Part shown: positions 31,501 through 63,988 of the stretch, one piece after another
How positions within the stretch are numbered: position 1 is the stretch's first letter
Layout of the letters: each line of letters starts with the position of its first letter
Assembly: GCA_977030845.1 (NCBI GenBank)
Contig: OZ365113.1
Span: forward strand, 38,936,001 to 39,000,000
Reading direction: 5' to 3'
Origin: Fimbriosthenelais zetlandica
Lineage: Eukaryota
Length of the DNA: 64,000 nucleotides
The notes under the pieces: model-generated
Databases searched by the model: none
What the model was told of the DNA's origin: nothing
The model's input: only the letters and a program-made list of their open reading frames with translations
Made by a program: the position numbers and the translations under genes

Positions 31501-34500
31501 AACTCCTATACATGTATATCATTCTCTTGGGTGCCAACTAAATCGGTCGCAAGTGTATCTTACCCAATTTATGCTATCCCTCGTATTAGATGTTCATAGA
31601 AATATGCTTGGTTCCTGATATCAGGAAGGCATTATGTTCCAGTATGCCCTGCTCGGGACATTCTGTGTTTCCGGTTCTCTGATTGGTCAATAGTTGCTCT
31701 GACGTCACATTTTCAAAATGACTCTTTCTTCGGTCGAAAACGGTCGATAAAGTCAGTCTTACATTATTTCCCTGACCATTTGAAAGGGATAACATGAATG
31801 AGAAGTCGTATTGTTGTTAGTATTCCCTGAGAGTGGATGGGAAACCCAAGGGCAGAGCCACTTTATAGCGTCTTCTAGCAGTCTCAATCTTACAAATATA
31901 CAAGTAACTATCACTGACACCATGTGATATACAAGTAACTATCACTGACACCATGTGATATACAAGTAACTATGACTGACACCATGTGATATACAAGTAA
32001 CTATCACTGACACCATGTGATATACAAGTAACCATCACTGACACCATGTGATATACAAGTAACCATCACTGACACCATGTGATATACAAGTAACTATGAC
32101 TGACACCATGTGATATACAAGTAACTATCACTGACACCATGTGATATACAAGTAACCATCACTGACACCATGTGATATACAAGTAACTATCACTGACACC
32201 ATGTGATATACAAGTAACCATCACTGACACCATGTGATATACAAGTAACTATGACTGACACCATGTGATATACAAGTAACTATCACTGATTGATTTCTTT
32301 GCCTTTTCCAGCTTCTCACCATGTGATTGATTTCTTTGCCTTTTCCAGCTTCTCACCATGTGATTGATTTCTTTGCCTTTTCCAGCTTCTCAAGTTGTGA
32401 ACGGCGTCACGTGGTCAGAAGCACTGGACGATCACTTCAGGGAAAACTACAATAGTGATAAAACACTCACATGGCAATACTTCGGCAGCGCATCAGGATT
32501 CTTCAGAAATTACCCAGGTAAAATTCATTTTGATAAATCCTCGCCAGCTGCTAGCCCAGGTGCTCTCTCATTATAATCTAAGACTTAATATTTAAAGGGA
32601 AGAATCTATAAGTAGTCCTTCCTCTGATGTAATCGTGTAATGTCAAAATTGTATGAGCTATTCCCCATCTTTTAATGTTTTTAATTAGAAATATTGAATA
32701 GACGGTATACCATTTGGTTCTTTCCTTCATAGTAGTAATTGGTGATAAAGAATTCTTAAATGATCTTAAGTGACATTAATGAATGAATCCTATTGATGCA
32801 TAATAGATATTCCATGCATTGTGACCCATTATCATTGGTCTCCGATTTGCCCCGGTCTCAGCTCTAATTCAACCCATCACCATTTTATCTGGGTTCTATT
32901 TTCTAATAAATATGTTTTGTACGTTTGCTTTGATCGTATACATATATATCATATGATAATATTATGTTCTTGGTATGCATATCGATCAATTCTATTCTCA
33001 AGAGCACTTCATCTGTTCTTGACTATTATGCATGTTGGCGTTCAATATATTAAAGTTCATTACTGTTCACAGCTATATTTCAACTCGTTAACATACTTTG
33101 GCAAAAATTCATCTGATAAGAGGCATAGCAAACAGTCATCTTATGGATTTGAACTTGATTCTTCGCAATACGTTCAATAGTTTAAAAATATTGTATTTTT
33201 GAGTAAAATGCCTTCGCTATGTAAAGTCTTGACAGCTGTGATTTCTTAGGCAATCGTCACTATTTGATTAATCTCATAAATATTGATTATAAAGATCAAT
33301 TCCTAACTGTGGAATGTCTTCAAAATCAGATAATCAATTTAAAAGCATGTTAAGTTATCTAGGAATGTAAGCTAATTTTTCTGTCTGTCTTCGGGATCGT
33401 AGAACATGCTAAATGATAATTTGCGAAAAATACTGCCTCCTCAAAATCGTTGAATTTTTCATAAGATAGCGTGCACTAGAGTATTTCTTCAATAGCTTTT
33501 TGTATGCATGACTGCCTGCTGTGTTGCAAAAAGCTTGAAGGAGGCCTCGGCGATGAAGTCGGGCCCCAAGCAGCCATATTGTTTCTGACTTTCGACCCCT
33601 GAGACTGCATTCCTTTGTGTTTAGGCATTCAATGGCCGAATTCAGGGGTAGATTTGTATGACTGTAGAACGCGCGGGTGGTAAGTGACCACATTCCTACA
33701 CTAGAGGGATCTATGTGACATGGAATATGTACCCCGCCCCTAATATATTCATTCCTCATCCCTTTGTTCCTTACACCACTCTTTCTTCTCCTTTCTTGTC
33801 CTTATTGCTTCTTTTTTTTGTTCCTATATGGAAACACATACACTTCAGAAAGTTTTGGAGAACAGCTTTGTAAATAACGCTGATATTATAATATTATATT
33901 CTCAACGATTTTCGTCCTGTGAACCATGCAAATTTGAATTGTTCCCTCTCCCATGTATAAAACCCGAAAATGAAGAACTGTGTGTGTGTGTTACCATTGC
34001 TCACTGCTCACACCCTGATAAGAATTTTCTCTTCATTTTTCTGCATTCTTGCTTCCTATATGTACGTGTCTTATTACAGCCCGAGTGAAACACATTTAAC
34101 GAGCTGACAATGACAAGTCAAAGGTTAATTGAGCAATAATTGAATCAGACCCCGATTCTCAATGAGGAGGATTAACGAGATTTTATTAACGCCCTACCAT
34201 TTTAATGACTTCTCATCAAAAAATTATCCCTCCCTGGCCCATTTCCCGAGGCAATCAGCTCTCCCACGTGGCCAGGCAAGAGAAGAGGAGAAGACAAGAA
34301 GGCAAAGCAATTTTTGGGTTTTGAACCAATCTTATCAAGCAGTGTGCTAGATGAAAATCAGTTTAAAAATGTCTTCTTAAAAAAGCCTTTTCTCCCAAGA
34401 TCGTGTTATTATTTAATTTCAACCAGCAATTGCTCATCGGCAGAGCAGTAAGTCTACCCAACTGTTTATTAAAACTTGGAATGAGATTCTTCAGAGCTAA

Positions 34501-40500: not shown

Positions 40501-43500
40501 TTTTTACTCACATATCAGCACTCTAGCCGACGTTCAGGAAAAAGTGCAGGTACGTTTCCTTCTGTTTTATAAATGATTGTAGGCTCACAGTTAATGGCAA
40601 CATTTTGGATATTTTAGAGGATATTGTAACATAATATTGATTACAACTGTTGCAATATATGTCAATTCTCACAATTTTCACACATATAAAAGTTACCTAT
40701 ACCTCAGTGAACTATTTTCAGTAATGAATATAAATAATAACCCATTTTAACTTGAACATTCCTCGTTTAAACCTATCATATACTATCAGTCCTTAATTCT
40801 CTACATGCAGCTTTCCAGAAAGGGCTTTCATTTTAATTGTTGCCTTTCAGTTTTCAACCATGTTCAGTTTTCAGGTATTCATTTTACCGAAATATATTTC
40901 CTCTTAGGTTTTCAGCCAGGTATTTGGTCCCTCAAAAATTGTCCTTTCCATTTGATCGAAAGGAAAAATTGGTCCTCATTGGATTACCTGTGAAATTTAT
41001 CATCTCATAATTACATATTGGGCTTCCTATTGACCAAAATACAAGAAATCTCAACATTTAAGTGCAGTAAATTATATAAAACGATGTTATGAAATTTCAT
41101 TAAAAACAAAAACTCATGTGCTTCAATACATATAGTCGTGATACTCATGAGCTTAACTTGATGTTGATTCCCAATTTCATGTGATATTACTTCAGAACCT
41201 GTCCTTCTCTCACAACCTTGACATGTGTGCCCTTTGCCCTATGCCCTTTCTAGGAGTACATCCATGTTCTCAGCAGACCGATGGTCATAGATCGTGAATA
41301 CACAACCACATGGACAAGTGTTTATGTCGATGAGGCGGTAGGTTCCTCAACAACAACCCCAAATCCTCTGTGGCCATTCGTGTGTGTCGTGCTATACATA
41401 GCCATACAAAGCTTCATTTTGCCCACTTCTGTGTTTTCTCCTTCTTGTACAGTTGTTCGACAAGCTGTTTTGTGTGTGTCGTACTGCAAACTGGTGATGA
41501 TGTGCCTTGCCTACACTCGTAACATCATCACTCTCTGTGATGTTACTCTTGAAGAATACAGCAGGCACAGATCTTTGTCCTTTGTACAAAATTGTCATTA
41601 AGTGTCACCGATTTTCAACTTTTACTGCTTTTTATCCCTTGTTAAGAATGCCTAGAATACATATTTTGAAATGACACCTTCACGATGCAATTATAAAATA
41701 CCTTAAGTAAAAAACGTATATAAAAGCACCAAAATATTTATGCTACATCTCGGGTAATATTTTGACGTTGAAGTATTGATCTATTCGCTTGATTACGTAA
41801 ATGAAAACAGCATTCTCTGAAGGAGTCATTTCCCTAGGAAATTCTTGAATTGATCAACTTTTTATTCATTATACATATATGTGCTATCTGTGTATTTTTC
41901 TCGTACAAAATGTTTGAATGTCATGAACCAAACACAGGCCTTATCTATGTTAACTGATACAGTGGTACTACCTCAAAGGACGATGGTTCATGACATTGAC
42001 AAACCTTTTCTTTTGTAACCTTTGAGTCACCTCTATATAGAAGCAGTCAACCACCTTTTTTAATCTCTGTGCTTTTCTTTCCTCACCGTTCTGCATGACT
42101 TTCAGAACTATGTAAAAGTGGTAAGCAGGCCTATGGTCATTGCCAAGCCAAATAAGACCATATGGACACCGGTTTATATGTCTGCCGCCTCAGTAGAGGA
42201 TATCAATCAGGTTTGTTGGAGTAAAGGGGACATGTCAAAGAAATCTGGGCTTACGGATGTTCACATCTCTGGGGCCTTAAATCTCTTCTTACTTGGTTTC
42301 TTCCTCAATAGCAAAACAATCTCTTACTACCCGTTATTTTTTCAGCCTCCCTTGGTTTGAAAAAATTATAACCTGATAATCTGAGTTTTAGGAGATTTTA
42401 TGTATGACTTCCTTCGTGCTACCACTATATTAATAGAAGGTGGATTGAATTGTTAGTTTTAGTAATATCCTGGGTGCTGATGGATCTTTCACTATAACAC
42501 CCATCCTTCCATCTATGGCCATTACGATGCACTAAATACCTGTGACAACCATAACCCAATTTTGACAGTTATATTTTTTGACCCCTGACAGATGACCTTC
42601 AACTGATTCAAATATTTCTTTCTCTCGTTCACACTTTGGATTGTATTTCCTGTCATATTAGATGGCAGATTAGACTTCCAACTGACCTATTTCTAAACAC
42701 CAGTGTTGAACTTTTGGTTTTCAGTCATATATTGCAATATTCAGTCCCCCATTGAGTGTCCTTAGTCCACTTGAAACTGACAGATGGTCAAATACCATCG
42801 AGCCTGACCCTCGACAATCTGTGGTAAGCGATCGCCGTGATATCAGACGATGGAACAACAGAACTGCATTATCAATGTTCACCATCAATATCCCTCATCA
42901 CTTTCTATTTTGCTTGTTTTAGGTCATGTAGATATTCTTAGCATCTTCCAAAAGTTTTGGATCTTAAATATTTTCTGCCAGTTTAGGCTCTTGATCAGAA
43001 TTGCAATAAGCCTGACATTTTCAGTGGATCTTCCTTTTTCATACTGATACTTTGGAACAAGTGCAGATGATCATTAAATTTTAGATTTCTTTTCTTTATA
43101 TTCTCTACAAAGGTTTACGAGCAATTTCCTGCATTTGTACTGTCTGTTAAATCATCATAGCCATGCAAATCGGATAACGTTCGATGACATTTTGAATACC
43201 GTTTTCTTAAAAGAACATTTGTACATATTACGTTTGGGAAGAGAATGTGAATTATTCCATATTTGGATATCATATAAGCATTTGAAAATTGATTTACAGT
43301 AAAGTAACTTGATCTTTCTAATGGAAAATGACCTTTCAAAGCCTGGTCACCATGGCAACGCTAAAAAAATGATATCCTGAACAATTGTCATTCTGAATCT
43401 GAATCTATCAGGCTAATTTAGAGCAAAGTCTCCATGCCAGGTTCTTAGACAATATTTAGATGATAATGATATCTCCTTGGGTACAGCAATTATTGTCCAC

Positions 43501-46500
43501 TCCACAACTAGCCTATAGTTAGCTGTAGACATTACCAACCTCACCCCCATACCTCGTTATACATCTCATGGAACACTTATAGGCAATCATACCTTAAAGA
43601 GTAATTAGTTGTAAGAATTTACCTCCCAAAACATCTAGAAAATCCCGTCAAAGGCAAATTAGTCCCAGAGAAACTTGAATGTAGTAATAGCATACACCTA
43701 TCACACCCAACATGTGTCCCAGCAGTGTAGCTATATATTAAATCAGATATGAAGTGTTAACACTGTTCATTATGCAGTGTTGTGTAATTGAATATAGGGC
43801 ATATTGGACACCATACAAGGTTAAGTCAGCCAATAGCCGTTTTAGGATTAGTAAGTGCAATAGGACATAAGAGCTACCTCTCTAATGAATGGTCTAAAGG
43901 GTATCTTTAGAAGGGAGATCTTGAACCAATTGAAATTTAAAAGACTTGATTATTGCATGTATATCATAATGGATGGGCTTTAATTTGATTTGAAATCTAC
44001 GTCTAAAGATACCCTGACTAGCCCCCTGCTTCTCTATAAAATATCATTTTCCAAGTTACAACTATAAGTCATTGTCCTTCATCTACTCCTGGCTGTCTGT
44101 GTATATTGTACATTGAACTTGATGTATATAATTAAGGCAATTGCATGAATTTATATTGAGTGGACAAATCCATATATTGTTGAGCTATGGGCCTTTATTA
44201 CAGATTATTCTAATACTAATGAGTTCATGCATTTAGATGTTATATCTATCTATATAATTATCTATTATAGAGCTATCCTTCATTGAAGCTTAGTTGATTA
44301 AATCCAATTAGTCATTCTTATTATCATACCAATGTTTTCTTGCAGTATACGTTTTATAGAGTCAAACTTATTAAATTATTTGAACAATCCATAGTGCAAA
44401 GCATTTGTTCTAGTGCTGCGCCACTCTTGAGGCTGCAGCAGTCACATTGCTATTCAACCATTATTTTTGAGTAGCTGTGATGACAAATAGTTACCTACCA
44501 TGGTCTTATGCCTTCTCTCAAAGATCTTTTTTAACTCTTGATTAATTTGACTGTATTTATAATGAGAGAATTGATTTTTTGGAACCCTGCTTTATACTGG
44601 AGGCCTTTTGTTGAGACTGGTCATCTGTTGAGTGACCACCATGTTTTTTGCTAACGTTCTGTTGATACTTTCTTTGCTCCTCTCGGGATGTGCCCTGGTG
44701 GTGCCCTCTGGTGATAAACCTTCGCATCTTCTCCTCGCATATTTACAGCATGATGCTGGCACCCAGGTAATTCACCGCCCTCTGCGTTTCACCCACCAAC
44801 CAACCAATAAGACCAACCTGTTCAATATACCCTTGTGGTGTGAATTTTAAGGCAACCAAAGCATAAACGATATATACCTATATTATATATATATATATAT
44901 ACATAGACAAAATGTCACCAACTGCCCACTGATATCACCATCAACATCCAAGAACAAAATCCTTTTTCTTTTCCCTTGATATATTCACCTTATCTTGTTC
45001 TTTTGTTTCTTGCTCAGTCTGTATTTTACTTTCTTTTTAAGAAACTATTTATATCATAATATTTTAATATAACTCGCATTTCTGTGCATAGATCATCCAC
45101 TTGTCTCGTGTCTTGTGACTTTTGACTTCTCCTATTGTCCTTGCCTCAGTGTTCCACCACTACAATGTAATCATGGTTATCAATATATGGTATTTAATTG
45201 TCACCTTTTTGTATTCATGGTGATGTACATGCTTTCACGTGTATATATTGGTATCACACGTATGTAATGGATATTTTTGGTTTATGCTGACACACATTAC
45301 CATCCAGAATGGTTTTGTCTTTAATATATTTATTCATCATTTGCGCATGGTCGTATCATATTACATTACTGACCAATGTAACTGGCACAGGTTAATGCTG
45401 CAGTGTCATTTAACACCTTAGGTATGTTGTGTCTATTTTACTAATCTGTGGTCGGGGAATAATATCATACAGCATGGTGAAACTGGTTCACAATACAAGA
45501 TAATGTATGACTAAACAGGGACCATAATGGAAATCGTTTACGCGAGTGGTGGGATGCGACTGGATCGATTCATCAACTCGATTGTTTAAGAATCCCTTTA
45601 TGATGCATTTCACTTTAGAATACAGCCAACGTTGATAACCTAGCATTCTATTGGTTAAATTACAAAATGCCTTTTTCTTCGATTTCAACTCGTTTCTGAG
45701 GACAGTTTACAGTGATAAATCTGACAGCATGGCCAGCTCCGTTCACTATCTTTGATTATACTGACGTATAAATCTATCCTGTACCTATGGAGGATAATGG
45801 ATGTTTCTTACTTCGCGGGCTCTGGGGTCATCTCTCTCTTAATTTTCCTCTTATTTATCCCTGGGAATACGGTGTCCAGGAGCCTGTTTCAAAATGATAA
45901 TTAGACGGGCTTAGCATTGCTAATTGTCCTTTTGAAGCGGGCCCTTGATTATACTTGCCTATTTTAACATTAAAATGAAGAGTAATTATGTTTTATAACA
46001 AAACATGATGACAATAATTTCATCTTCAGCTAGCAATAACGAAATACTAAGAATCAGTTTAAATTATTACAAACGGACAATAAGATAATTGATATTCATC
46101 AAGATGGGTTAAATAGTTAAGATTCAAAGCCTTGGATGTTAGTTATTTCACACACTTGGCAGAAATTAATATCACAATTAAATTTGTTTATCTTCCTGTA
46201 TTGAGTGCATGAATACCTGAATAACTTTTGTAGTTATTGACATTATAACAACACACTAGGAATCACTGTCTATGCTGAACCAATGTTCAAAGCATTACAC
46301 AACTCAAATACACTAAGATGTTATTGTAGCTGCTAGCAAATGAGGAATTGATGTTATATGAAATCCAGTATATAAAACTTGAACTGTAAACTTTCTTAAA
46401 CTGTTGTTTTGTCCGAAATCATTGTTGACCTGGTAATTAGGATCATCAAATATTTCAGGGATTGCGAATGATGACTTCTGTGGCTCAACCAGTGTTTGAT

Positions 46501-49500
46501 CGACGAAATGAAACTGTAAGTTTAATTTTCATAAGCTGCTGACATTCAATTTCCATTAATAAATCTGCCTTTAATATTTTATTAAAAGTATCCAAGACAC
46601 ATTTTGTTTCCTTAGCCTGAGTGAACGTAATACATCGGACAGAAAAAAGTTACTTATAAATCATTCTTTCCATTTCTATTTAGTATAATAGATACTTTTC
46701 AGGACTGAGTCACTTTCTGAAGGTTCGATCAGCTTTTATGGCCATTAACAAATGTAACATTAACATGAGACATATAGCTCAGCTGATAGTGTGTCCTTTA
46801 GATTAAAATAAATACAAACTGCGTCATAACCACTGTAGGACAGGAGCAGGTCATAGGTCTAATATAGAAACCTAGATTTCAAAATAGTAATCAACAGCAA
46901 AGACATAAATAATTATAGTTTAGAGATAGCCATATTATAGCAATATCACTTTGCTCAGATTAGATCCAAATCTCTTGTTCCTTCATATATGAAATGAGGG
47001 CTTATATTTAGGACCACTCAAAGATTGTGATCAGAAGAATCAACATCAACATCAACCAAATTAATGTATCATTAACCTGGCGGGGAGGCAACTGGGGATA
47101 AAAATCAATCTCCGAAGTCGATTTATTGTTATCCCCAGGTGATTTATGCGATTAATAGGTGTAACTTTCCTATACTTACACTAGCATACATAGTTAGCTT
47201 ACCTTTCACCATCCAACAGGCAAAAAATGGTATATTACTTGGCGTTATGGGTACTGATGTGCCTCTAAAGGAATTGATCAAATTGACACCAGAATATAAG
47301 GTAAGTTGCTTCTGAAATGTGCAATCATTTATATTCATAATTTCAGATCTTTATACCATTCTTTAATATCCTGCGGATGTCATCTCACACATTAATGTTT
47401 TTTATTTCAGCTTGGTGTGAATGGTTATTCTTTTGCAATAACCAATAATGGATATCTCCTCTTTCATCCCGACTTCCGACCAACGGTAAGATTGTTTACG
47501 GTACATTTATGTAATGCCCCCAAAATACCGACATAATTATATTGATTCTTTATACCTCATAAGAGGTATTTCCAACTTGATTGTTCCCAGTCCCATTTGT
47601 AAGGTTTTCAATTGCATTGAGATGGAACTTTTCCGCCCACCTCCATTTATAATACAAAGTTTTATATTCCTCCAATTGATTCTTGGCAGGCTAAACTTGC
47701 AGAGACATTATAGTTGAAATAGGACTTTTGAAGGGATTGTAGTTTTTAATTGACTTGTATTATTTCACCAGGACTAAACAAGTGACATAATACTGCCATA
47801 TATTCCGTGCTATTCAAACATATATATCCTCAGAACCCGTGATCTCTCGACACACGATACAAGCCTGATCATGAAATCTCTATACTAGTTTTACTTATAC
47901 ATTTGACTAGTGTCTTGATCATTATTTTGCTAATACAAGCTCATGCCAGTGGTTCACGATTTGAGTTCTCCTTTGTAATCTCTTCGTTGCTCCTTACTAT
48001 TGTGTCGACAGTGGAATGGAGCAAATGCTAGTACTCAGGTACAACTATTTAGTCTCAGAATCCCTTAGTCGGAATTTTATCACAAATGGCTTGTCGCAAG
48101 GCTCTGTCTTAAGATATTTTTACTTCTTAGATATATAGTTTCAGTGCATTCAAAGAACTTATTATTTAGACAGAGCAAGTCGGACCCGTCTCTTTTACTA
48201 CTTAACTGCACTTCATGTCCTTTCAAATACAGTGGCACAGCAATTTAATCACCTCAACATTGAGCATTATCAAAGCAACGAGAGCTTGGGTAATGAGGAA
48301 TAGTTTATATACATTTCACCTGAAGTTTAGCATTTGAGATTTTCTGACTTTTTCGTTTCTGTTAGCAGAACAGATACCGAAATATTCTCTTCTTTTACTT
48401 CACGAGTAATGTTTATCTTGTGTCTTTTCTGACTGAAAATCTAATGTTTTAGAATTTAGAAATGAAATTTTTCAGAACAAGAATCGGGAATATGAAAATC
48501 GGGGATCAGCAGCTGTCCACCCAACATGGGTACAGGCAGCTTCTGATACCTATTTCAGATTTTTGTTTTTCTTCTTTTGTGTTGTTGACTGGGTCCAAAT
48601 TTTCTGTCATTGAGCTCCCGTAGGAATTAAGAGACAAAGAGAATATTGTCGTGAATTAAAAGTCAAGGACATAGGCCTACCACCAAATGACCCTTCTACA
48701 TTCAACCCTTTTTCATTCATTCGAAACAAGAAAAATTATCCGACTCATGCATGCCTTATATTTCAATATCTAGATGAATATTAATTTTATGATAGCTTTG
48801 GCATTAGATGTAGTTCTTTATCTAGCATGAAGGCACTGTTAACATCTATCATGTTATGACTGTCAGCCAAAATCCCATGCATTCTTTCATATAAAGCTCA
48901 GCAGTTTTGCTGAGGTTCAGACTCATTAACATGGATATAGGAAAAATCATTTTTTCATTGACTGGCAACACATCCTAAACTTCCAACATTTCATATGCTC
49001 TCATCACATTGTCATTTCTCCATGCAATGTTTTACACCAGTTTTACACCAAAATGAAAACACGTGTGGAATATTTATACATTGGCTGACTGATTAAATGC
49101 ACCTATAGGCAAACACGAGACTATACTCTGTCACAGTAGACATACAATCCGTGCATGGTCAGACAATACTGTTAATACACGAAATTCTTCTGAAAATTGT
49201 CTTTTTTCTTTTCGTCTTATACATTGAATATTTAGATTGCAATCGCTGGAATATCGCTAGAAAAACGGCTTATGGCATACCCAGGGAATGGAATTGCATA
49301 TTCATCACAATGAAAACGCATCGACCCTATTTGTTTTGAGTACTTATAATATATAATCCTCTGAAGTATCGATATCGAAAACAAATTTGATGAAATGTCC
49401 CGTGGGTTTAGGGACAGTTCAGTTATTGTCTGTTCTCTGCTGATATTATTAACAAGGGACATTCTATATTTAGGGATCGGCGTTTTGGCAAATAGTGTGT

Positions 49501-60017: not shown

Positions 60018-63000
60018 CTCTCTCTTGTTATCTTTCTCACCTCTCTAAGATTACTACCCTGCATGGAGAACAGCATCAAGGATATCTTGAATTGGTTTTT
60101 GTCATCTTTGGAAGGCCTGTGATTTCATTCATTTATTCAATGCCTCATTTAATTTCCCCCCGAATATTGGATGATAGGAATGAAAGCCTGCTACCTGGAC
60201 TCAGGCTCTAGCTTCTGCTCTCCCCCCGCCCCCCTCCCCGACCAAAATAAAATCAAATCTGACATTATGTGTTTAATTCCGGTTCAAAACGCATCTCTCT
60301 CTCACCTCAGCCATGTTGTGATCCCTTTTTGATGGGGCCTCCATCTCATAATCATTATTCTTGAGGACAATTATGGAACATCAAATGTTTGATTTTGTGT
60401 TTGTCACGTATCTCATCCATATGTGTCTTGCAACTAGATTCATTTGTCATTTGCTTGGAGTTCTGGTCCACGTTGTTCCTTATCGTCTTTACCCCACCTG
60501 TCTCGTGTGACATGACATCAAGTGTCCCCAGTACTGCTAGCTTTTTGTAACCCTGCGTGTCTATGTTACTTTGTATATAGCAGCAGAAAAGTATCGCAGA
60601 GGCCCGGTAATTCTTACATGTGATAAGACACAATTACTGCATTGGTCGAATTGCCTTAGGCCAAACACCACTACACTTTTACTCCAAGACCGAATCATGA
60701 CATGTAATCTTTCTTGTGAAAAGTAAGTTTAATATTATTCTCCCTGGACATGGATTCATGGTGATGGGCTGGTGATGGACAAATCCTTCATTTCTTACCT
60801 TTATTTTTTTGGGCCTTTTTCTCATGGCAAAAAGTAGTAGAGCTAACTGTTTTGATGTAGATTGTAGATGGCCAGAAGTTTACCTTTCATTTAATGATTT
60901 GAAAAAGATGAAAGAACAAAGATTATTGGTAATATTGTATCAAGTTTGTCTAGTGGTATGTAGCATTCAATTGGTGGCTATTTTAGTGTGGTTTTTGTAT
61001 GATGTAAATTGTGAAAATTGGCTGGTAGATGTATTGATTGATGTTCCCTAGCCCAAAATACAAAGACTGGTACTTCCATTTTGAATAAACCTGTTCTGTC
61101 TGACAGAGCTAGAGCTTTGGGAACAACAATCACTGATTCAGTGATTCAGTGAGCTTTTAAATGTTCATTTTTTAAATTTTGATGTCCATACTATATATGA
61201 GGCTATTTTGGGGGTGACTTCCGATAGACTTGAAACAACTACTTATGGCTGATACTTTATTTCAAGCAATTCCATTGTAGCCATGTGCTTTTAGTTTCGT
61301 ATATTATTGAGGAGTTCCTGAGAATTTCCTGTTTCTGCCTGATGTTGAAACAGGAATTTTATGAAGGCAGTAAATAATAGCAGAATGCTGATTGGCCCTT
61401 GTTGGTGACATGATTGTATACAACTCTCATGAGTGAAATAATTATCGGCTTCTGGTCTGGAAGCACATGGGCTGAGCAATTGACTTGTCCTTCGAGGATG
61501 TTTATTGAGATAAAGGCCATTTATTCACGTTTGTTGGGGGGATTTCTGAAAGTGAAAAAATCCTGAATTCTTAGTCTCCTCTTGTGACATCTCTGGATCC
61601 CCTATAAGCTATTGTAATCCCTTCTTTTTACCCTTGTAATATTGTACATCAATATATAGCACACTGCCACTATTCTAGCTAAGTCTTCCTTCCCATCCCA
61701 TCCCATTTGCCATGAGTTACGGCACCTTACTGCCTCTTCAGGCACAGTCATCCATCCTGAGCTTGAAGTCCTTGTCACTGGGGCTACTGGTGGCTACTAT
61801 GATCACACTGATGGTGGAGAGGACAGAAGAAAAGACAAGAATCCAGATGATGTCTCCATCACTGTTGAGGAAGAAGGTGAGGGAGGCGGTGATGGGGACA
61901 TTAATGAATACCAATATGACGAAGAGGAGGAAACTCAGAACTATCCGTGGCTTGACACAGTTGGGGTCCTTCTTCGCAACATGGACCGGAAAGAGAAGCG
62001 TAATTTCATGAAGGAATACTACAACCTTGTCAGACAGGATCGAAGTGATGAATTCATCCAAATCTGGCTGGATAAGAAAGTCCGACGGTATGGACCTAAG
62101 CTTATTGGACATCGTACTTGTCGGCGAGATTTTGGACTCTTCCTTTTAGCAGAACCTCACCGCCACCAGCAGTGGAATGGCTCACGTGACTGCCCTGAGA
62201 ATAAGTGTAAAAAGTGAGTAACCCCGCTGCAACACACATAACCAGTGCAGTCAACTTACCAAAATACCTTATTTCCCCGTCCTGTCCAACACCACAAAAT
62301 ATTCCGTGGCATCAGTTATGAGAAATGTTTTCTTTCTTAATTCAGAGTTCCTGGATGAAATTCATCTTATTCTTATTTTATATATATATACATATCTCAT
62401 GAGTCATTGTCATTTCTGTCCTTGTCCTGTACATATTTATTTAATTCTCAATGGTATTGATATTGCCATGCAAGAATGAATGCATTTTACAAGCCTTTTT
62501 CAATATTTTCTTGATCAAACTCAAGCATGTTGATCTGACTTAAATCAATATCTTTCACGCTTGTGGTCACGTTCTTCATTGTGATTGAATGAGGTCATGA
62601 CATTATCTGCTTACAGCAACCAATTAAAATAACATGATAAACGACATGCTAAAAGGGCTAGCAAGAACGGGTAGAAGGAAACTTTTTTAAGAAGCTTTAG
62701 TTTAAAATGTTTTTTGTAATGGGAGATTTGTCCATCTATTTCTGAGTAAGGATAGGCCAAAATAATAATGCAGTTAATTCAATTGACTGAGTTTCAGATC
62801 ACAGCATATTCTTAAAATCCAATAGCATGGCTAAGAAAGATAATCATGAAGTAAAGTGGTGCAATGGGCCTAATGCATTTGGAGCATTTTGCCAACCAGA
62901 AAAAGGGGCCATGTTCCTCGAGTACATGGCCTCGACGTGACTGATGCCCCCTCCCTACAAACATGTACATATTACTATGCACACCTGCCGCCTCCTTGCG

Positions 63001-63988
63001 TTACCCCTGTCAGCTTGAATGAGACCCTCTCGGTCCAAAATAACACAATTAACCCAGATAAGCCCTATGTTGGTATGCCGACTCCCTTTTGAGTTAAATT
63101 GAACCATTTTTAATGTATTTTTAGTTTCAATGCTAAGAATCCCAAAATTGCCATTGGACCCGGCCATGGCATTTTTATTTTTGATGACGGTCGCCATGGG
63201 TAGTATGTCTGAGCAGGAAGGATTATCCAAGACAGTATAAATATTTTAGTTTTACTTGTTCATTCAGTTTTGAACCCACAATAATCTTTACCTCATTTTG
63301 GTGAGACTAGATGAAAGTCAAAAATCCCGTTTAGCCACTGAGGTCGAAAAAAGAGTGAGGAATTCCTGAAAGTTTAATTACATATACCGGCACACTGATC
63401 ATAATTATCACATAAAAGCTGTGAATTTTACATTATGTCTTCAAGAATTACTCTGGGAATGCTATGCATATCAAAATTGACTTATGCCATTATTTATACT
63501 GTGTTGGTATCCCTCCTGGAAGGAAGACTGGGTTTTCCTTTATCAACCATGAGCCACCAATCCTCCTTGACTTATCTGGGTTATGAAAACAACGAAAACA
63601 TTGAACATAATCACTATATTATTTTCCGGCATTATCTTGAGCCTCTCAACAATATGTGCTTGGCAGGCGACAACAACCAATCTGAGACTGAGGAGATGCA
63701 AATTGGCTCTGAACCAGTCTTTGAATCAGACTACTATGTTCCTGATTTTGATGAGTTGAGCAAGTACGTGAATGACGATGAAGTTCGACGGCGAGTAAAT
63801 GAGTGGCGGGAGATGCAAATGAAGAATTCCCCAATGCTAGAAATCAAGTTATGGTTTGACAAGGTGATGAAACGGTCTGGGCCACAAATAACAGGACATG
63901 AGGAGTGCTTTAAAACATACCCCCTCTTCGCTTCTGCAAACTTCTCCTTTTTCTCTGGAACCCTTGAAGGTTGCGAGGCGTGTTATAA
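1478..63988 (+). CDS. CACNA2D3: Voltage-dependent calcium channel subunit alpha2delta (alpha2delta-3/4-like), multi-exon gene, 5' and 3' partial
   Basis: Hand-spliced exons give an in-frame protein with family motifs: [120 protein letters not shown]. The MIDAS Thr position is Ala (NIAAF), non-canonical as in alpha2delta-3/4. The symbol means clade similarity, not proven orthology. First exon(s) and the GPI-signal exon lie outside the window. Confidence 0.95.
10936..11061. mobile_element. Fold-back / MITE-like palindromic element
   Basis: Nested inverted repeats tagaccctttgttggtt/aaccaacaaagggtcta, cccgtctagtgcgt/acgcactagacggg, atatactc/gagtatat. Confidence 0.7.
14300..15300 (-). mobile_element. 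Degraded non-LTR retrotransposon (CR1/L2-like) ORF2 remnant
   Basis: Minus-strand translation LKPIK.NAPSE...[12 protein letters not shown]...LVHKG...RN resembles the pre-RT region; many stops; boundaries approximate. Confidence 0.3.
16149..16222. mobile_element. Mini MITE, PIF/Harbinger-like termini
   Basis: ccagggcccgtttcag ... ctgaaacaggtccctgg with internal cttagcattgctaat; second copy at 45876. Confidence 0.5.
19140..19500 (-). mobile_element. Degraded LINE RT remnant
   Basis: [13 protein letters not shown] resembles RT motif GVPQGSVLGPLLF; frameshifted; approximate. Confidence 0.28.
20985..21044 (+). CDS. CACNA2D3: alpha2delta exon, phase 0-0 ([20 protein letters not shown])
   Basis: tttttttccag|...cag|gtaaca; matches RLVEAAEEAHLKHEF; follows a 19.4-kb intron. 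Confidence 0.88.
22925..22985. repeat. Tandem repeat, 21-bp unit x ~2.9
   Basis: atgtaaaagcaccacatagtc repeated. Confidence 0.9.
24781..24950 (-). mobile_element. CR1/L2-type LINE ORF2 C-terminus
   Basis: Minus strand reads [50 protein letters not shown], the typical ORF2 tail (RT...WN.LP..IR.....FK). Confidence 0.72.
25165..25450 (+). mobile_element. LINE reverse-transcriptase fragment
   Basis: [20 protein letters not shown] matches the non-LTR RT motif D(L/F)xKAFDxVxHxxL. Confidence 0.68.
27158..27287 (+). CDS. CACNA2D3: alpha2delta exon, phase 0-1 (KDYPKAKK...[23 protein letters not shown])
   Basis: tttacag|...t|gtgagt; HFN..PVN...S.V.VPTN.Y motif. Confidence 0.92.
31896..32289. repeat. 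Minisatellite, 31-bp unit x ~12.7
   Basis: atatacaagtaac(t/c)at(c/g)actgacaccatgtg, head-to-tail with no spacers. Confidence 0.97.
32288..32392 (+). repeat. 37-bp tandem triplication containing the 3' splice site
   Basis: gattgatttctttgccttttccag|cttctca(ccatgt) starting at 32288, 32325 and 32362. Confidence 0.95.
32386..32517 (+). CDS. CACNA2D3: alpha2delta exon, phase 1-1 ([14 protein letters not shown]...[16 protein letters not shown])
   Basis: Third of three identical acceptors and the only one in frame; donor g|gtaaa. Confidence 0.93.
36765..36834 (+). CDS. CACNA2D3: alpha2delta exon, phase 1-2 ([24 protein letters not shown])
   Basis: cttcctag|...tg|gtaagc; Cache YxxxxRxW motif. Confidence 0.92.
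37343..37493 (+). CDS. CACNA2D3: alpha2delta exon, phase 2-0, start of VWA domain with MIDAS DASGS
   Basis: [50 protein letters not shown]; ccag|...aag|gtacag. Confidence 0.95.
37654..37728 (+). CDS. CACNA2D3: alpha2delta exon, phase 0-0 ([25 protein letters not shown])
   Basis: gcag|...aag|gtgata; C.NGTLVQA motif. Confidence 0.93.
37756..37815. repeat. Tandem duplication, 30-bp unit x2
   Basis: tataagagggtgtgtacaatgtcactataa twice. Confidence 0.9.
37936..38025 (+). CDS. CACNA2D3: alpha2delta exon, phase 0-0 ([30 protein letters not shown])
   Basis: ttcttcag|...gag|gtaatt; VWA helix. Confidence 0.9.
38620..39000 (-). mobile_element. RTE-clade-like LINE 3' remnant
   Basis: GHVSR...G...CDLK...ID resembles the RTE ORF tail WLGHVxRM...KxDLK...ID. 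Confidence 0.35.
39779..39892 (+). CDS. CACNA2D3: alpha2delta exon, phase 0-0 ([38 protein letters not shown])
   Basis: tttag|...agg|gtaagt; [12 protein letters not shown]. Confidence 0.94.
40107..40185 (+). CDS. CACNA2D3: alpha2delta exon, phase 0-1 ([27 protein letters not shown])
   Basis: ttatcag|...g|gtgaat. Confidence 0.94.
40500..40549 (+). CDS. CACNA2D3: alpha2delta exon, phase 1-0 ([17 protein letters not shown])
   Basis: ttttcag|...cag|gtacgt; ISTLADVQE motif. Confidence 0.93.
41254..41337 (+). CDS. CACNA2D3: Alternative exon variant A, phase 0-0 ([28 protein letters not shown])
   Basis: ctttctag|...gcg|gtaggt; closest to vertebrate [26 protein letters not shown]. Confidence 0.92.
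42106..42210 (+). CDS. CACNA2D3: Alternative exon variant B, phase 0-0 ([35 protein letters not shown])
   Basis: actttcag|...cag|gtttgt; 14/28 aa identical to variant A; 105 nt, no stop. Confidence 0.82.
42725..42823 (+). CDS. CACNA2D3: Alternative exon variant C, phase 0-0 ([33 protein letters not shown])
   Basis: cttttggttttcag|...gtg|gtaagc; 99 nt, open; keeps Y2, I3, S7, P9, T18 and W (+1) of A/B; more diverged. Confidence 0.62.
44749..44766 (+). CDS. CACNA2D3: Candidate 18-nt microexon, phase 0-0 (HDAGTQ)
   Basis: cttctcctcgcatatttacag|catgatgctggcacccag|gtaatt; upstream ctaac branch-like motif; variable linker position. Confidence 0.55.
45876..45947. mobile_element. Mini MITE, same family as 16149-16222
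   Basis: ccaggagcctgtttcaaaa ... ttttgaagcgggcccttg; internal cttagcattgctaat. Confidence 0.5.
46459..46515 (+). CDS. CACNA2D3: alpha2delta exon, phase 0-0 ([19 protein letters not shown])
   Basis: atttcag|...act|gtaagt; matches LMTTVAMPVFSKQNET. Confidence 0.92.
47220..47300 (+). CDS. CACNA2D3: alpha2delta exon, phase 0-0 ([27 protein letters not shown])
   Basis: ccaacag|...aag|gtaagt. Confidence 0.93.
47411..47485 (+). CDS. CACNA2D3: alpha2delta exon, phase 0-0 ([25 protein letters not shown])
   Basis: tttcag|...acg|gtaaga. Confidence 0.94.
48012..48038 (+). CDS. CACNA2D3: Candidate 27-nt microexon, phase 0-0 (WNGANASTQ)
   Basis: Long pyrimidine tract ...tgtgtcgacag|...cag|gtacaa; in frame. 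Confidence 0.5.
49588..49662 (+). CDS. CACNA2D3: alpha2delta exon, phase 0-0 ([25 protein letters not shown])
   Basis: tttacag|...gag|gtaaag; KPNY.SVDL.EVE. Confidence 0.93.
50025..50051 (+). CDS. CACNA2D3: Candidate 27-nt microexon, phase 0-0 (ASNYSIYDE)
   Basis: ttgtttgattccag|...gag|gtatat; donor only moderate. Confidence 0.4.
51335..51373 (+). CDS. CACNA2D3: 39-nt exon, phase 0-0 ([13 protein letters not shown])
   Basis: cttttcattgcctttttctag|...gag|gtgagt; strong splice sites, in frame. Confidence 0.7.
51487..51558 (+). CDS. CACNA2D3: alpha2delta exon, phase 0-0 ([24 protein letters not shown])
   Basis: cacacag|...atg|gtaggc; LRN.M...TG motif. Confidence 0.9.
51655..51716 (+). CDS. 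CACNA2D3: alpha2delta exon, phase 0-2 ([21 protein letters not shown])
   Basis: ctctttccag|...ag|gtaaat. Confidence 0.92.
51895..51968 (+). CDS. CACNA2D3: alpha2delta exon, phase 2-1 ([24 protein letters not shown])
   Basis: ttacttcag|...g|gtaagt. Confidence 0.9.
52183..52225 (+). CDS. CACNA2D3: alpha2delta exon, phase 1-2 ([15 protein letters not shown])
   Basis: cctttcag|...tg|gtgagt. Confidence 0.88.
52352..52458 (+). CDS. CACNA2D3: alpha2delta exon, phase 2-1 ([35 protein letters not shown])
   Basis: cttctag|...t|gtgagc; W.YC...C pattern. Confidence 0.88.
52736..52850 (+). CDS. CACNA2D3: alpha2delta exon, phase 1-2 ([38 protein letters not shown])
   Basis: cttaccag|...ag|gtaaag; CD.ELI..+L.DA. 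Confidence 0.92.
54230..54277 (+). CDS. CACNA2D3: Candidate 48-nt cassette exon, phase 2-2 ([16 protein letters not shown])
   Basis: tactaat branch-like motif, pyrimidine tract, gcacag|...aag|gtaacg; phase matches flanking exons, no stop. Confidence 0.5.
55553..55632. repeat. Tandem repeat, 28-bp unit x ~2.8
   Basis: ataattagcatattcaatcaattgtcat repeated. Confidence 0.9.
56802..56882 (+). CDS. CACNA2D3: alpha2delta exon, phase 2-2 ([27 protein letters not shown])
   Basis: ccttttcag|...cc|gtacgt; matches GVEVAFLGTRTGLSR. Confidence 0.92.
57063..57166 (+). CDS. CACNA2D3: alpha2delta exon, phase 2-1 ([34 protein letters not shown])
   Basis: cattacag|...g|gtaagt; L.Y.RA...F..S+PF. Confidence 0.9.
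57302..57495 (+). CDS. CACNA2D3: alpha2delta exon, phase 1-0 ([17 protein letters not shown]...AAVVGLQM...CNLTCESP)
   Basis: atttcag|...cca|gtacgt. Confidence 0.92.
57604..57666 (+). CDS. CACNA2D3: alpha2delta exon, phase 0-0 ([21 protein letters not shown])
   Basis: ccttttag|...gag|gtaagt. Confidence 0.94.
57783..57868 (+). CDS. CACNA2D3: alpha2delta exon, phase 0-2 ([29 protein letters not shown])
   Basis: tttttgcag|...ag|gtacgg. Confidence 0.92.
57956..58034 (+). CDS. CACNA2D3: alpha2delta exon, phase 2-0 ([26 protein letters not shown])
   Basis: gctttcag|...aat|gtaagt; D+Q.MC motif. Confidence 0.92.
58147..58199 (+). CDS. CACNA2D3: alpha2delta exon, phase 0-2 ([18 protein letters not shown])
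   Basis: tttacag|...ct|gtaagt. Confidence 0.9.
58412..58470 (+). CDS. CACNA2D3: alpha2delta exon, phase 2-1 ([19 protein letters not shown]), end of alpha2 chain
   Basis: ctcttgtag|...g|gtaagt; matches FLVEFNLCSWWHSDMTA. Confidence 0.93.
58831..59117 (+). repeat. Diverged direct duplicate, copy 1 (copy 2 at 61223-61522)
   Basis: Shared blocks 27/30 (58861 vs 61263) and 30/35 (58918 vs 61363), plus a ...gagat.aaggccattt end. Confidence 0.8.
59984..60015. repeat. (CT)n microsatellite
   Basis: about 16 CT units. Confidence 0.9.
60581..60722 (+). CDS. CACNA2D3: Alternative delta exon variant a, phase 1-2 ([48 protein letters not shown])
   Basis: tatatag|cagcag...aa|gtaagt; 142 nt, open; RRGP..TC...CxxxCEK pattern like variants b and c. 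Confidence 0.72.
61223..61522 (+). repeat. Diverged direct duplicate, copy 2
   Basis: See copy 1 at 58831-59117. Confidence 0.8.
61742..62213 (+). CDS. CACNA2D3: Alternative delta exon variant b, phase 1-2, long acidic insert (...[19 protein letters not shown]...DCPENKCK)
   Basis: gcctcttcag|...aa|gtgagt; 472 nt, open, GC-elevated. Confidence 0.85.
62900..63072 (+). CDS. Candidate exon, phase 2-1 ([10 protein letters not shown]...[17 protein letters not shown]...KPYV)
   Basis: ttttgccaaccag|...g|gtatgc; only the phase-2 frame is open; GC-elevated; weak homology. Confidence 0.3.
63667..63988 (+). CDS. CACNA2D3: Alternative delta exon variant c, phase 1-2 (...[26 protein letters not shown]...GCEACYK)
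   Basis: gcttggcag|...aa|gtgagt; 322 nt, open; 12/29 identical to variant b in the core. Confidence 0.87.

What the first reader, a model, noticed from the sequence alone, without database searches (positions are those of the whole stretch)
41254..42823. Three tandem homologous exons (A/B/C) that would swap one wall of the Cache ligand pocket: candidate mutually exclusive cluster
Seen: three phase 0-0 exons (84, 105 and 99 nt) with good splice sites, each starting xY(I/V)xxxSxP and containing T..W. A vs B is 14/28 identical and C is more diverged. Including two would duplicate a structural strand. A has W-T-S-V-Y-V-D, B has W-T-P-V-Y-M-S (Asp lost, new NKT sequon), and C has W-S-N-T-I-E-P-D (Tyr lost). 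Established (from memory): the equivalent alpha2delta-1 segment WTNVYLD supplies the pocket Tyr and Asp. Inference: splicing generates isoforms with intact, altered or dead amino-acid pockets. All three are multiples of 3 and the introns are 768 and 514 nt, so neither NMD nor steric clash explains exclusivity, and RNA pairing or RBP control is implied. I do not recall this cluster from vertebrate CACNA2D genes.
Basis: partly seen in the sequence, partly recalled or inferred. Interest (0 to 1): 0.85.

Follow-up and report, generated by a model that had tools for sequence, protein, structure and literature searches.

The report
Swappable pocket exons in alpha2delta gene
A worm's gene for the alpha2delta helper subunit of calcium channels holds three side-by-side versions of the exon that forms one wall of its amino-acid-binding pocket, all kept by natural selection; they are probably used one at a time, as RNA already shows for the same spot in sea-slug, oyster and octopus genes.

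Summary
Exons A (41254-41337), B (42106-42210) and C (42725-42823) are open, phase 0-0 and AG/GT-bounded. They lie in one intron of an alpha2delta-3/4-like gene.

B and C are not pseudoexons. A syntenic contig from a related species (L001) keeps all three, with splice sites intact and dN/dS of 0.03, 0.07 and 0.06.

Exon A matches rabbit alpha2delta-1 residues 427-454, which carry pocket residues Tyr452 and Asp454. A and B keep the Tyr. B replaces the Asp with Ser. C has Ile in place of the Tyr.

The cluster is not new as a kind. Dunn et al. [quoted passage not shown] Their Aplysia transcripts each carry one variant between ..RVQ and GLGMM.., the same junctions as here (..KVQ | x | GLRMM..). 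That paper does not link the exons to the ligand pocket.

No RNA from this species was reachable, so one-at-a-time use rests on homology. C's homology to A and B is weak. I found no docking/selector RNA pairing above chance.

The scan has noted a second tandem-exon cluster in this gene (60.6-64 kb). Verdict: an annelid member of a known lophotrochozoan exon cluster.

The parts
33624..33680 (+). Exon end encoding ..L-Y-D-C-R-T-R-G-W. With the Y that opens the next exon (about 37344) it gives the N-terminal half of the amino-acid-binding motif, YxxxxRxWY.
   Evidence: tblastn of alpha2delta-4 (P0097) against the window. Motif definition from PMC8915833.
40500..40549 (+). Constitutive exon upstream of the cluster (..[16 protein letters not shown]). 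It ends in phase 0.
   Evidence: Conserved in L001 at 428-477 with 1 amino-acid change.
41254..41337 (+). Exon A, 28 aa. This is the canonical version. It keeps the pocket Tyr and Asp (W-T-S-V-Y-V-D) and has the strongest polypyrimidine tract of the three.
   Evidence: Aligns to rabbit alpha2delta-1 residues 427-454. dN/dS 0.027 against L001.
41440..41487 (+). Conserved intronic block downstream of A (88% identity). It includes one of two GUGUGUGUCGU-like motifs.
   Evidence: No significant fold.
41912..42003 (+). Hairpin 100-190 nt upstream of exon B, with a 14-bp perfect stem (41917-41930 / 41984-41997).
   Evidence: Window z = -3.5. The same stem in L001 is weaker (z = -1.2) and shows one A-U to U-A double change.
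42092..42097 (+). UGCAUG (Rbfox-type motif) 14 nt upstream of exon B, at the same position in L001.
42106..42210 (+). Exon B, 35 aa. It keeps the Tyr (W-T-P-V-Y-M-S), has Ser where A has Asp, carries an N-K-T sequon and has a 7-aa longer tail. Its donor is weaker (gtttgt).
   Evidence: dN/dS 0.069; 14 of 20 differences at codon position 3.
42725..42823 (+). Exon C, 33 aa. It keeps the xYIxIxSxP start and the Trp, but has Ile where A and B have the pocket Tyr ([10 protein letters not shown]).
   Evidence: dN/dS 0.057. Conservation stops within 7 nt of both splice sites. 13 of 17 differences at codon position 3.
44632..44748 (+). Very highly conserved intronic block (94% identity) upstream of the microexon. 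It has a UGCUAAC branch-point-like motif and no AG for about 118 nt.
   Evidence: No Rfam match. Fold z = +0.69.
44749..44766 (+). 18-nt phase 0-0 microexon (HDAGTQ). It would insert 6 aa directly after the A/B/C segment.
   Evidence: Conserved in L001 with AG/GT borders and 1 amino-acid change.
46459..46515 (+). Constitutive exon downstream ([19 protein letters not shown]).
   Evidence: 100% amino-acid identity in L001.
47220..47300 (+). Constitutive exon encoding ..GVMGTD.., which holds the Asp of the motif's C-terminal half (equivalent to Asp493).
   Evidence: motif.

Best explanation
The window holds most of an annelid-type alpha2delta gene, closest to vertebrate alpha2delta-3/4. At the junction between the VWA domain and the first dCache_1 domain it has a cluster of three tandem alternative exons. 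Each mRNA most likely takes one of the three.

A is probably the default. It has the best 3' splice site and the canonical sequence. B and C are probably regulated choices.

The three proteins would differ in the segment that carries the Tyr of the amino-acid-binding motif and the neighbouring pocket-lining residues:
- A has a complete motif.
- B keeps the Tyr, swaps the neighbouring Asp for Ser and adds a glycosylation sequon and a longer linker.
- C lacks the Tyr, so it should bind amino-acid ligands poorly or differently.

Shown here: the exons exist, are conserved and are under strong purifying selection as coding sequence, and they map to the pocket wall. Inferred: one-at-a-time use (from mollusc transcripts at the same position) and the effect on ligand binding (from the vertebrate structure and the motif). 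The choice is probably made by RNA-binding proteins acting on conserved intron elements, not by a docking/selector RNA structure. This last point is the weakest.
For: - Anatomy and frames.
- Gene identity: VWA_N Pfam hit at 66.5 bits; tblastn of alpha2delta-4 across the window; PDB alpha2delta-1 hits for exon A.
- Orthologous locus L001 keeps A, B and C with AG/GT borders. dN/dS is 0.027, 0.069 and 0.057. The excess of synonymous changes has P = 1e-4 to 8e-6. Changes concentrate at third codon positions. The aligned introns are only 39-57% identical.
- Pocket residues are Tyr452, Asp454, Ala455 and Leu456. The motif is Y...R.WY plus Y[x]D. Its other parts are intact in the window.
[quoted passage not shown] One Aplysia variant also lacks the Tyr (W-T-N-I-N-E-D) and one is also 35 aa long.
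Against: - No transcript of this or a close species was found. The collection held only genomic reading frames for these exons.
- Every combination of A, B, C and the microexon stays in frame, so co-inclusion would not be removed by nonsense-mediated decay.
- C's homology to A and B is statistically weak, so C could be an independent cassette.
- No variant-to-variant orthology with Aplysia is evident.
- Only one other species supports conservation.
- Ligand binding by invertebrate alpha2delta rests on docking in the literature only.
Confidence: 0.68

Rival explanations
1. A is constitutive. B and/or C are ordinary cassette exons that are added after A, inserting 33-35 residues into the VWA-Cache linker, rather than replacing it.
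For: All exons are phase 0-0, so A+B, A+C or A+B+C stay in frame. C is not demonstrably homologous to A and B. Vertebrate alpha2delta-4 tolerates a longer linker at this point.
Against: B is 50% identical to A and repeats the same structural residues: Y2, SRPMVI, W20 and VY. C repeats the xYIxIxSxP start and the Trp spacing. In Aplysia the three versions at this position occur one per transcript.
Confidence: 0.17
2. The exons are mutually exclusive, but the swap does not tune ligand binding. It changes the VWA-to-Cache junction for another purpose, such as folding or trafficking, glycosylation (the N-K-T sequon in B), or contacts with the alpha1 subunit or other partners.
For: The first half of the exon is the end of the VWA region. 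Pfam places VWA up to residue 398 and dCache_1 from residue 411 of the L007 protein, whose A-like exon starts at residue 405. B differs from A at many non-pocket positions and gains a conserved sequon. No physiological role for endogenous ligand binding has been established, even in mammals.
Against: The motif Tyr is the clearest categorical difference between C and A/B. A Tyr-less variant also occurs in Aplysia. Four of the 13 pocket-lining residues lie in this segment.
Confidence: 0.12
3. B and C are decaying exon duplicates (pseudoexons) that are never spliced in.
For: No RNA evidence was obtained for this species. B has a weak donor (gtttgt) and a weak polypyrimidine tract.
Against: dN/dS is 0.069 and 0.057. 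Frames stay open, AG/GT borders are kept, and changes follow a third-position pattern equal to that of the constitutive exons. For C, conservation ends at the splice sites.
Confidence: 0.03

Closest known systems
Three mutually exclusive exons of mollusc CaV alpha2delta (Aplysia KY705238; Crassostrea and Octopus isoforms), Dunn et al. 2018, Sci Rep 8:3263 (PMC5818475)
   Same: Same gene family and same position: between the exon ending ..VQ and the exon starting GL(G/R)MM, described as 'between VWA and Cache domains'. Three variants of 28-35 aa. Each starts x-Y-[IV] and contains a Trp. One variant is 35 aa long and one lacks the pocket Tyr.
   Different: Different phylum. No one-to-one orthology of variants is visible; Aplysia variants 1 and 3 are each other's closest relatives. 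The paper gives transcripts but no function and no link to the ligand pocket. Here there is genomic and selection evidence but no transcripts.
Vertebrate alpha2delta-1 splice regions A, B and C
   Same: Alternative splicing within the Cache domains of an alpha2delta subunit.
   Different: Those are two cassette exons and one alternative acceptor. [quoted passage not shown] They are not tandem homologous exons and do not touch residues 427-456.
Docking-site/selector mutually exclusive clusters (Dscam exons 4, 6 and 9; 14-3-3 zeta), recalled from my own knowledge
   Same: Clusters of more than two tandem homologous exons. Neither steric hindrance, splice-site incompatibility nor nonsense-mediated decay can enforce exclusivity.
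   Different: No conserved docking/selector complementarity was found here.
Mutually exclusive exon pairs of CaV alpha1 subunits (CaV1.2 8/8a, CaV2.2 e37a/e37b, Drosophila cacophony)
   Same: Tandem duplicated exons that swap a functional module of the calcium-channel complex (abstracts listed).
   Different: Those are in the pore subunit, not the auxiliary subunit. They come as pairs, not a triplet.

Membership tests
alpha2delta (CACNA2D-type) subunit | VWA_N, VWA with DxSxS MIDAS, dCache_1 and VGCC_alpha2 regions in order | tested here: met
   VWA_N scores 66.5 bits against a cutoff of 34.7. The VWA exon holds D-A-S-G-S. Collinear tblastn hits of alpha2delta-4 run from about 1.5 kb to about 57.7 kb of the window. 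Exon A hits only alpha2delta-1 chains in the PDB, but weakly (E about 0.4, as expected for 28 aa).
Tandem-duplication mutually exclusive exon cluster | Neighbouring exons in one intron with the same phase and similar length | tested here: met
   84, 105 and 99 nt, all phase 0-0, within 1.6 kb.
Tandem-duplication mutually exclusive exon cluster | Sequence homology between the exons | tested here: inconclusive
   A and B are clearly homologous (14/28 identical). C against A/B gives hhalign P=0.006 and probability 6%. A profile built without C does not retrieve it among the hits listed.
Tandem-duplication mutually exclusive exon cluster | Exactly one exon of the cluster in each mature mRNA | not testable with these tools
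   No transcripts of this or a close species were reachable. The feature is met for the same-position cluster in Aplysia.
Tandem-duplication mutually exclusive exon cluster | Each copy maintained as coding sequence | tested here: met
   dN/dS 0.027, 0.069 and 0.057 against L001, with splice sites kept.
dCache_1 amino-acid-binding motif (YxxxxRxWY ... Y[x]D) | All motif residues present | tested here: met
   Met for the A and B isoforms: Y-D-C-R-T-R-G-W|Y, the Tyr in V-Y of A and B, and the Asp in G-V-M-G-T-D. Not met for the C isoform, which has Ile at the Tyr position. Actual binding was not tested.
Docking-site/selector RNA competition (Dscam type) | A conserved intronic docking sequence complementary to a selector next to each variable exon | tested here: not met
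   Duplexes between conserved blocks reach -18 to -23 kcal/mol. Shuffled docking sequences reach -20 to -33. The best sites are not orthologous between species. No conserved complementary 8-mers link the relevant introns. With only two species, power is low.

The most novel reading that the evidence does not exclude
The three-exon cluster is an ancient lophotrochozoan device that lets one alpha2delta gene make both ligand-competent subunits (Tyr-containing A and B types) and ligand-blind or re-tuned subunits (Tyr-less C type). The Tyr-less option is kept or re-invented in both annelids (Ile) and molluscs (Asn in Aplysia variant 3). If so, amino-acid sensing by the calcium-channel complex would be switched by cell-type-specific splicing. 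No one has connected these exons to the pocket.
Probability: 0.3. Interest if true: 0.7.

Novelty: new member of a known kind. Interest (0 to 1): 0.45.

Why it matters
The physiological role of the amino-acid (gabapentinoid) pocket of alpha2delta subunits is still unclear. Here, and apparently in molluscs, evolution has kept alternative versions of one pocket wall under strong selection, including a version without the motif Tyr. That offers a natural experiment: express the A-, B- and C-forms and ask what ligand binding does for trafficking and channel function. It also extends a cluster known only from a table and supplement in a mollusc paper to annelids. That suggests it dates back at least to the common ancestor of the two phyla, or that it arises repeatedly at the same exon.

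Tried and rejected
1. Transcript evidence. Protein-collection searches with the B and A reading frames each returned only the genomic contig L001. A full-length query (the L007 reading frame, region 330-500) returned mostly vertebrate alpha2delta proteins and no lophotrochozoan isoforms.

2. Whole-library HMMER search with the 57.3-kb exon. It returned mostly short reading frames from contigs under 7 kb, too short to walk to the cluster. The top hit, P0001, was a repeat-protein artefact.

3. Metagenome scan. It gave 20 loci, most of them a divergent MIDAS-less paralogue with a single A-like exon and no B or C. A C-like hit in L018-L020 is interrupted by a stop codon and was rejected as chance.

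4. Docking/selector pairing. Three tests found nothing above chance: duplex folding between conserved blocks, a scan with shuffled controls and conserved complementary 8-mers.

5. Inverted repeat I1 (41214-41242 with 43794-43822). Its second arm is not conserved in L001, so it was rejected.

6. The highly conserved block at 44632-44748 as a structured or known RNA. It has no Rfam hit and fold z = +0.69.

7. A fourth homologous exon. None was found.

8. Structure prediction of the three isoforms.

Full report
**What is there**

The + strand of the window carries most of an alpha2delta gene.
- A bat alpha2delta-4 protein (P0097) gives collinear tblastn hits from about 1.5 kb to about 57.7 kb.
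- One exon is a strong Pfam VWA_N match (66.5 bits).
- The VWA exon has an intact D-x-S-x-S site.
- The local sequence (..[11 protein letters not shown]....[24 protein letters not shown]) is closest to the alpha2delta-3/4 type.

After the exon ending at 40549 (..EKVQ, phase 0) come three open segments, at 41254-41337, 42106-42210 and 42725-42823. They are 84, 105 and 99 nt long, all phase 0-0, and each has an AG acceptor and a GT donor. The next exons are an 18-nt microexon (44749-44766) and 46459-46515 (GLRMM..), also phase 0.

**Are B and C real exons?**

A search with the reading frame through B found one relative, on a 9.9-kb Logan contig (L001). L001 is syntenic. It has the upstream exon, A, B, C, the microexon and the two downstream exons in the same order.

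Between the two species:
- Synonymous divergence is about 0.6-1.2.
- The aligned introns are 39-57% identical.
- A, B and C are 90%, 81% and 83% identical.
- dN/dS is 0.027, 0.069 and 0.057.
- All six splice sites are kept.
- The excess of synonymous changes has P = 3e-5 for B and 8e-6 for C.
- 14 of 20 differences in B and 13 of 17 in C fall on third codon positions, as in the constitutive exons.
- For C, similarity stops within 7 nt of each splice site.

B and C are therefore translated, selected exons, not pseudoexons.

**Homology**

A and B are 50% identical and share Y2, S-R-P-M-V-I, W20 and V-Y. C shares only Y2, I3, S7, P9, a Val and the Trp. hhalign gives P = 0.006 but only 6% probability. 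A profile built without C does not retrieve it among the hits listed. C's status as a duplicate therefore rests mainly on its position, phase, length and N-terminal pattern. No fourth copy exists in either species.

**Where the segment sits in the protein**

Exon A aligns to rabbit alpha2delta-1 residues 427-454 (E-Y-L-D-V-L-G-R-P-M-V .. W-T-N-V-Y-L-D). The gabapentin/L-Leu pocket is lined by Trp207, Val209, Tyr219, Trp225, Tyr238, Arg243, Trp245, Tyr452, Asp454, Ala455, Leu456, Thr463 and Asp493 (bioRxiv 10.1101/2022.12.05.519047). Four of these 13 residues therefore come from this exon.

The universal dCache_1 amino-acid motif is YxxxxRxWY plus Y[x]D. The C-terminal Tyr and Asp hold the ligand's amino group (PMC8915833). 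In the window:
- The N-terminal half is intact (Y-D-C-R-T-R-G-W|Y).
- The Asp lies in the constitutive exon at 47220-47300 (G-V-M-G-T-D).
- The Tyr lies in the variable exon.

A and B have this Tyr and C has Ile. B also has Ser at the Asp454 position, a conserved N-K-T sequon and a tail 7 residues longer. The labels 'intact, altered or dead' remain inference.

**Prior knowledge**

A full-text search found Dunn et al. 2018 (PMC5818475). [quoted passage not shown] Its supplement prints three Aplysia transcripts that differ only between ..R-V-Q and G-L-G-M-M.., each carrying one variant of 28, 35 or 28 aa. These are the same junctions as here (..K-V-Q | x | G-L-R-M-M..).

- One Aplysia variant lacks the Tyr (W-T-N-I-N-E-D) and one is 35 aa long, like B.
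- Variant-by-variant orthology is not evident. Aplysia variants 1 and 3 are closest to each other.
- The oyster variant is given only as 'QAY..DPR', which recalls C (S-Y-I .. E-P-D-P-R). I could not fetch that sequence.
- The paper says nothing about function, and it predates the pocket structures.
- No other paper turned up.
- The vertebrate alpha2delta-1 splice regions A, B and C are elsewhere in the protein and of a different type.

**Mechanism of choice**

- The introns are long enough to rule out steric exclusion.
- All splice sites are GT-AG.
- Every combination stays in frame.

Exclusivity, if it is strict, therefore needs another cause. I looked for docking/selector pairing in three ways:
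- Duplexes between conserved intron blocks reach -18 to -23 kcal/mol, while shuffled docking sequences reach -20 to -33.
- The best sites are not orthologous between the two species.
- No conserved complementary 8-mers link the relevant introns.

With two species the power is low, but nothing supports RNA pairing.

Conserved intron elements that could bind proteins do exist:
- two GUGUGUGUCGU-like motifs after A;
- a UGCAUG 14 nt before B in both species;
- a hairpin before B, with z = -3.5 in the window and -1.2 in L001.

A has the best acceptor and is probably the default.

**Distribution**

Most of the 20 metagenome loci with an A-like exon belong to a divergent paralogue. This paralogue lacks the MIDAS motif, and its full mRNA is L007. 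It has a single exon at this position. These loci say nothing about the orthologue.

L004 and L005 carry a 35-aa B-like exon that keeps the Asp. It is the first exon after the upstream exon.

**Verdict**

- B and C are genuine, selected exons.
- The mapping to the pocket is correct.
- Mutually exclusive use is likely (about 0.7) by homology with molluscs, but it is not shown for this animal.
- The RNA-pairing idea is unsupported.
- The cluster is a new (annelid) member of a kind already recorded in molluscs.

The link between these exons and the amino-acid pocket appears not to have been made before, and it is the part worth following up. The scan has also noted a second tandem-exon cluster in this gene at 60.6-64 kb.

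Noticed in passing
window 44632-44766: An 18-nt phase 0-0 microexon (HDAGTQ) lies right after the cluster. It is preceded by 117 nt that are 94% identical between the two species, more conserved than the coding exons. This stretch has no AG for about 118-130 nt and holds a UGCUAAC branch-point-like motif. It looks like a tightly regulated microexon that would insert 6 residues next to the pocket wall.
   Followed up: partly
window 42092-42097 and 43954-43959 (L001 2206 and 4430): Two UGCAUG (Rbfox-type) motifs are conserved in position between the species. One lies 14 nt upstream of exon B, inside its weak polypyrimidine tract.
   Followed up: partly
window 41912-42003 (L001 about 2040-2102): A hairpin upstream of exon B has a 14-bp perfect stem in the window (z = -3.5). 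The same stem in L001 is weaker and shows one A-U to U-A double change.
   Followed up: partly
window 41379-41392 and 41468-41486: Two copies of a GUGUGUGUCGU-like motif lie in the intron just after exon A, both kept in L001. They may be binding sites for UG-binding splicing factors.
   Followed up: no
L007 978-4376: A metagenome record holds a full-length intronless mRNA for a 1132-aa alpha2delta-like paralogue. It lacks the DxSxS MIDAS motif and the motif Arg spacing, and has a single A-like exon.
   Followed up: partly
L004 2159-2263 (also L005): In another species' contig, the first exon after the ..ADVQENVQ exon is a 35-aa B-like version (N-Y-I-K-V .. W-T-P-V-Y-L-D ..) that keeps the Asp. 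No A-type exon is seen in the 985-nt intron before it.
   Followed up: partly
window 60581-63988: The same gene has a second set of three tandem homologous exons near the start of the delta chain. The scan has already noted and followed it up (s1-223608).
   Followed up: no
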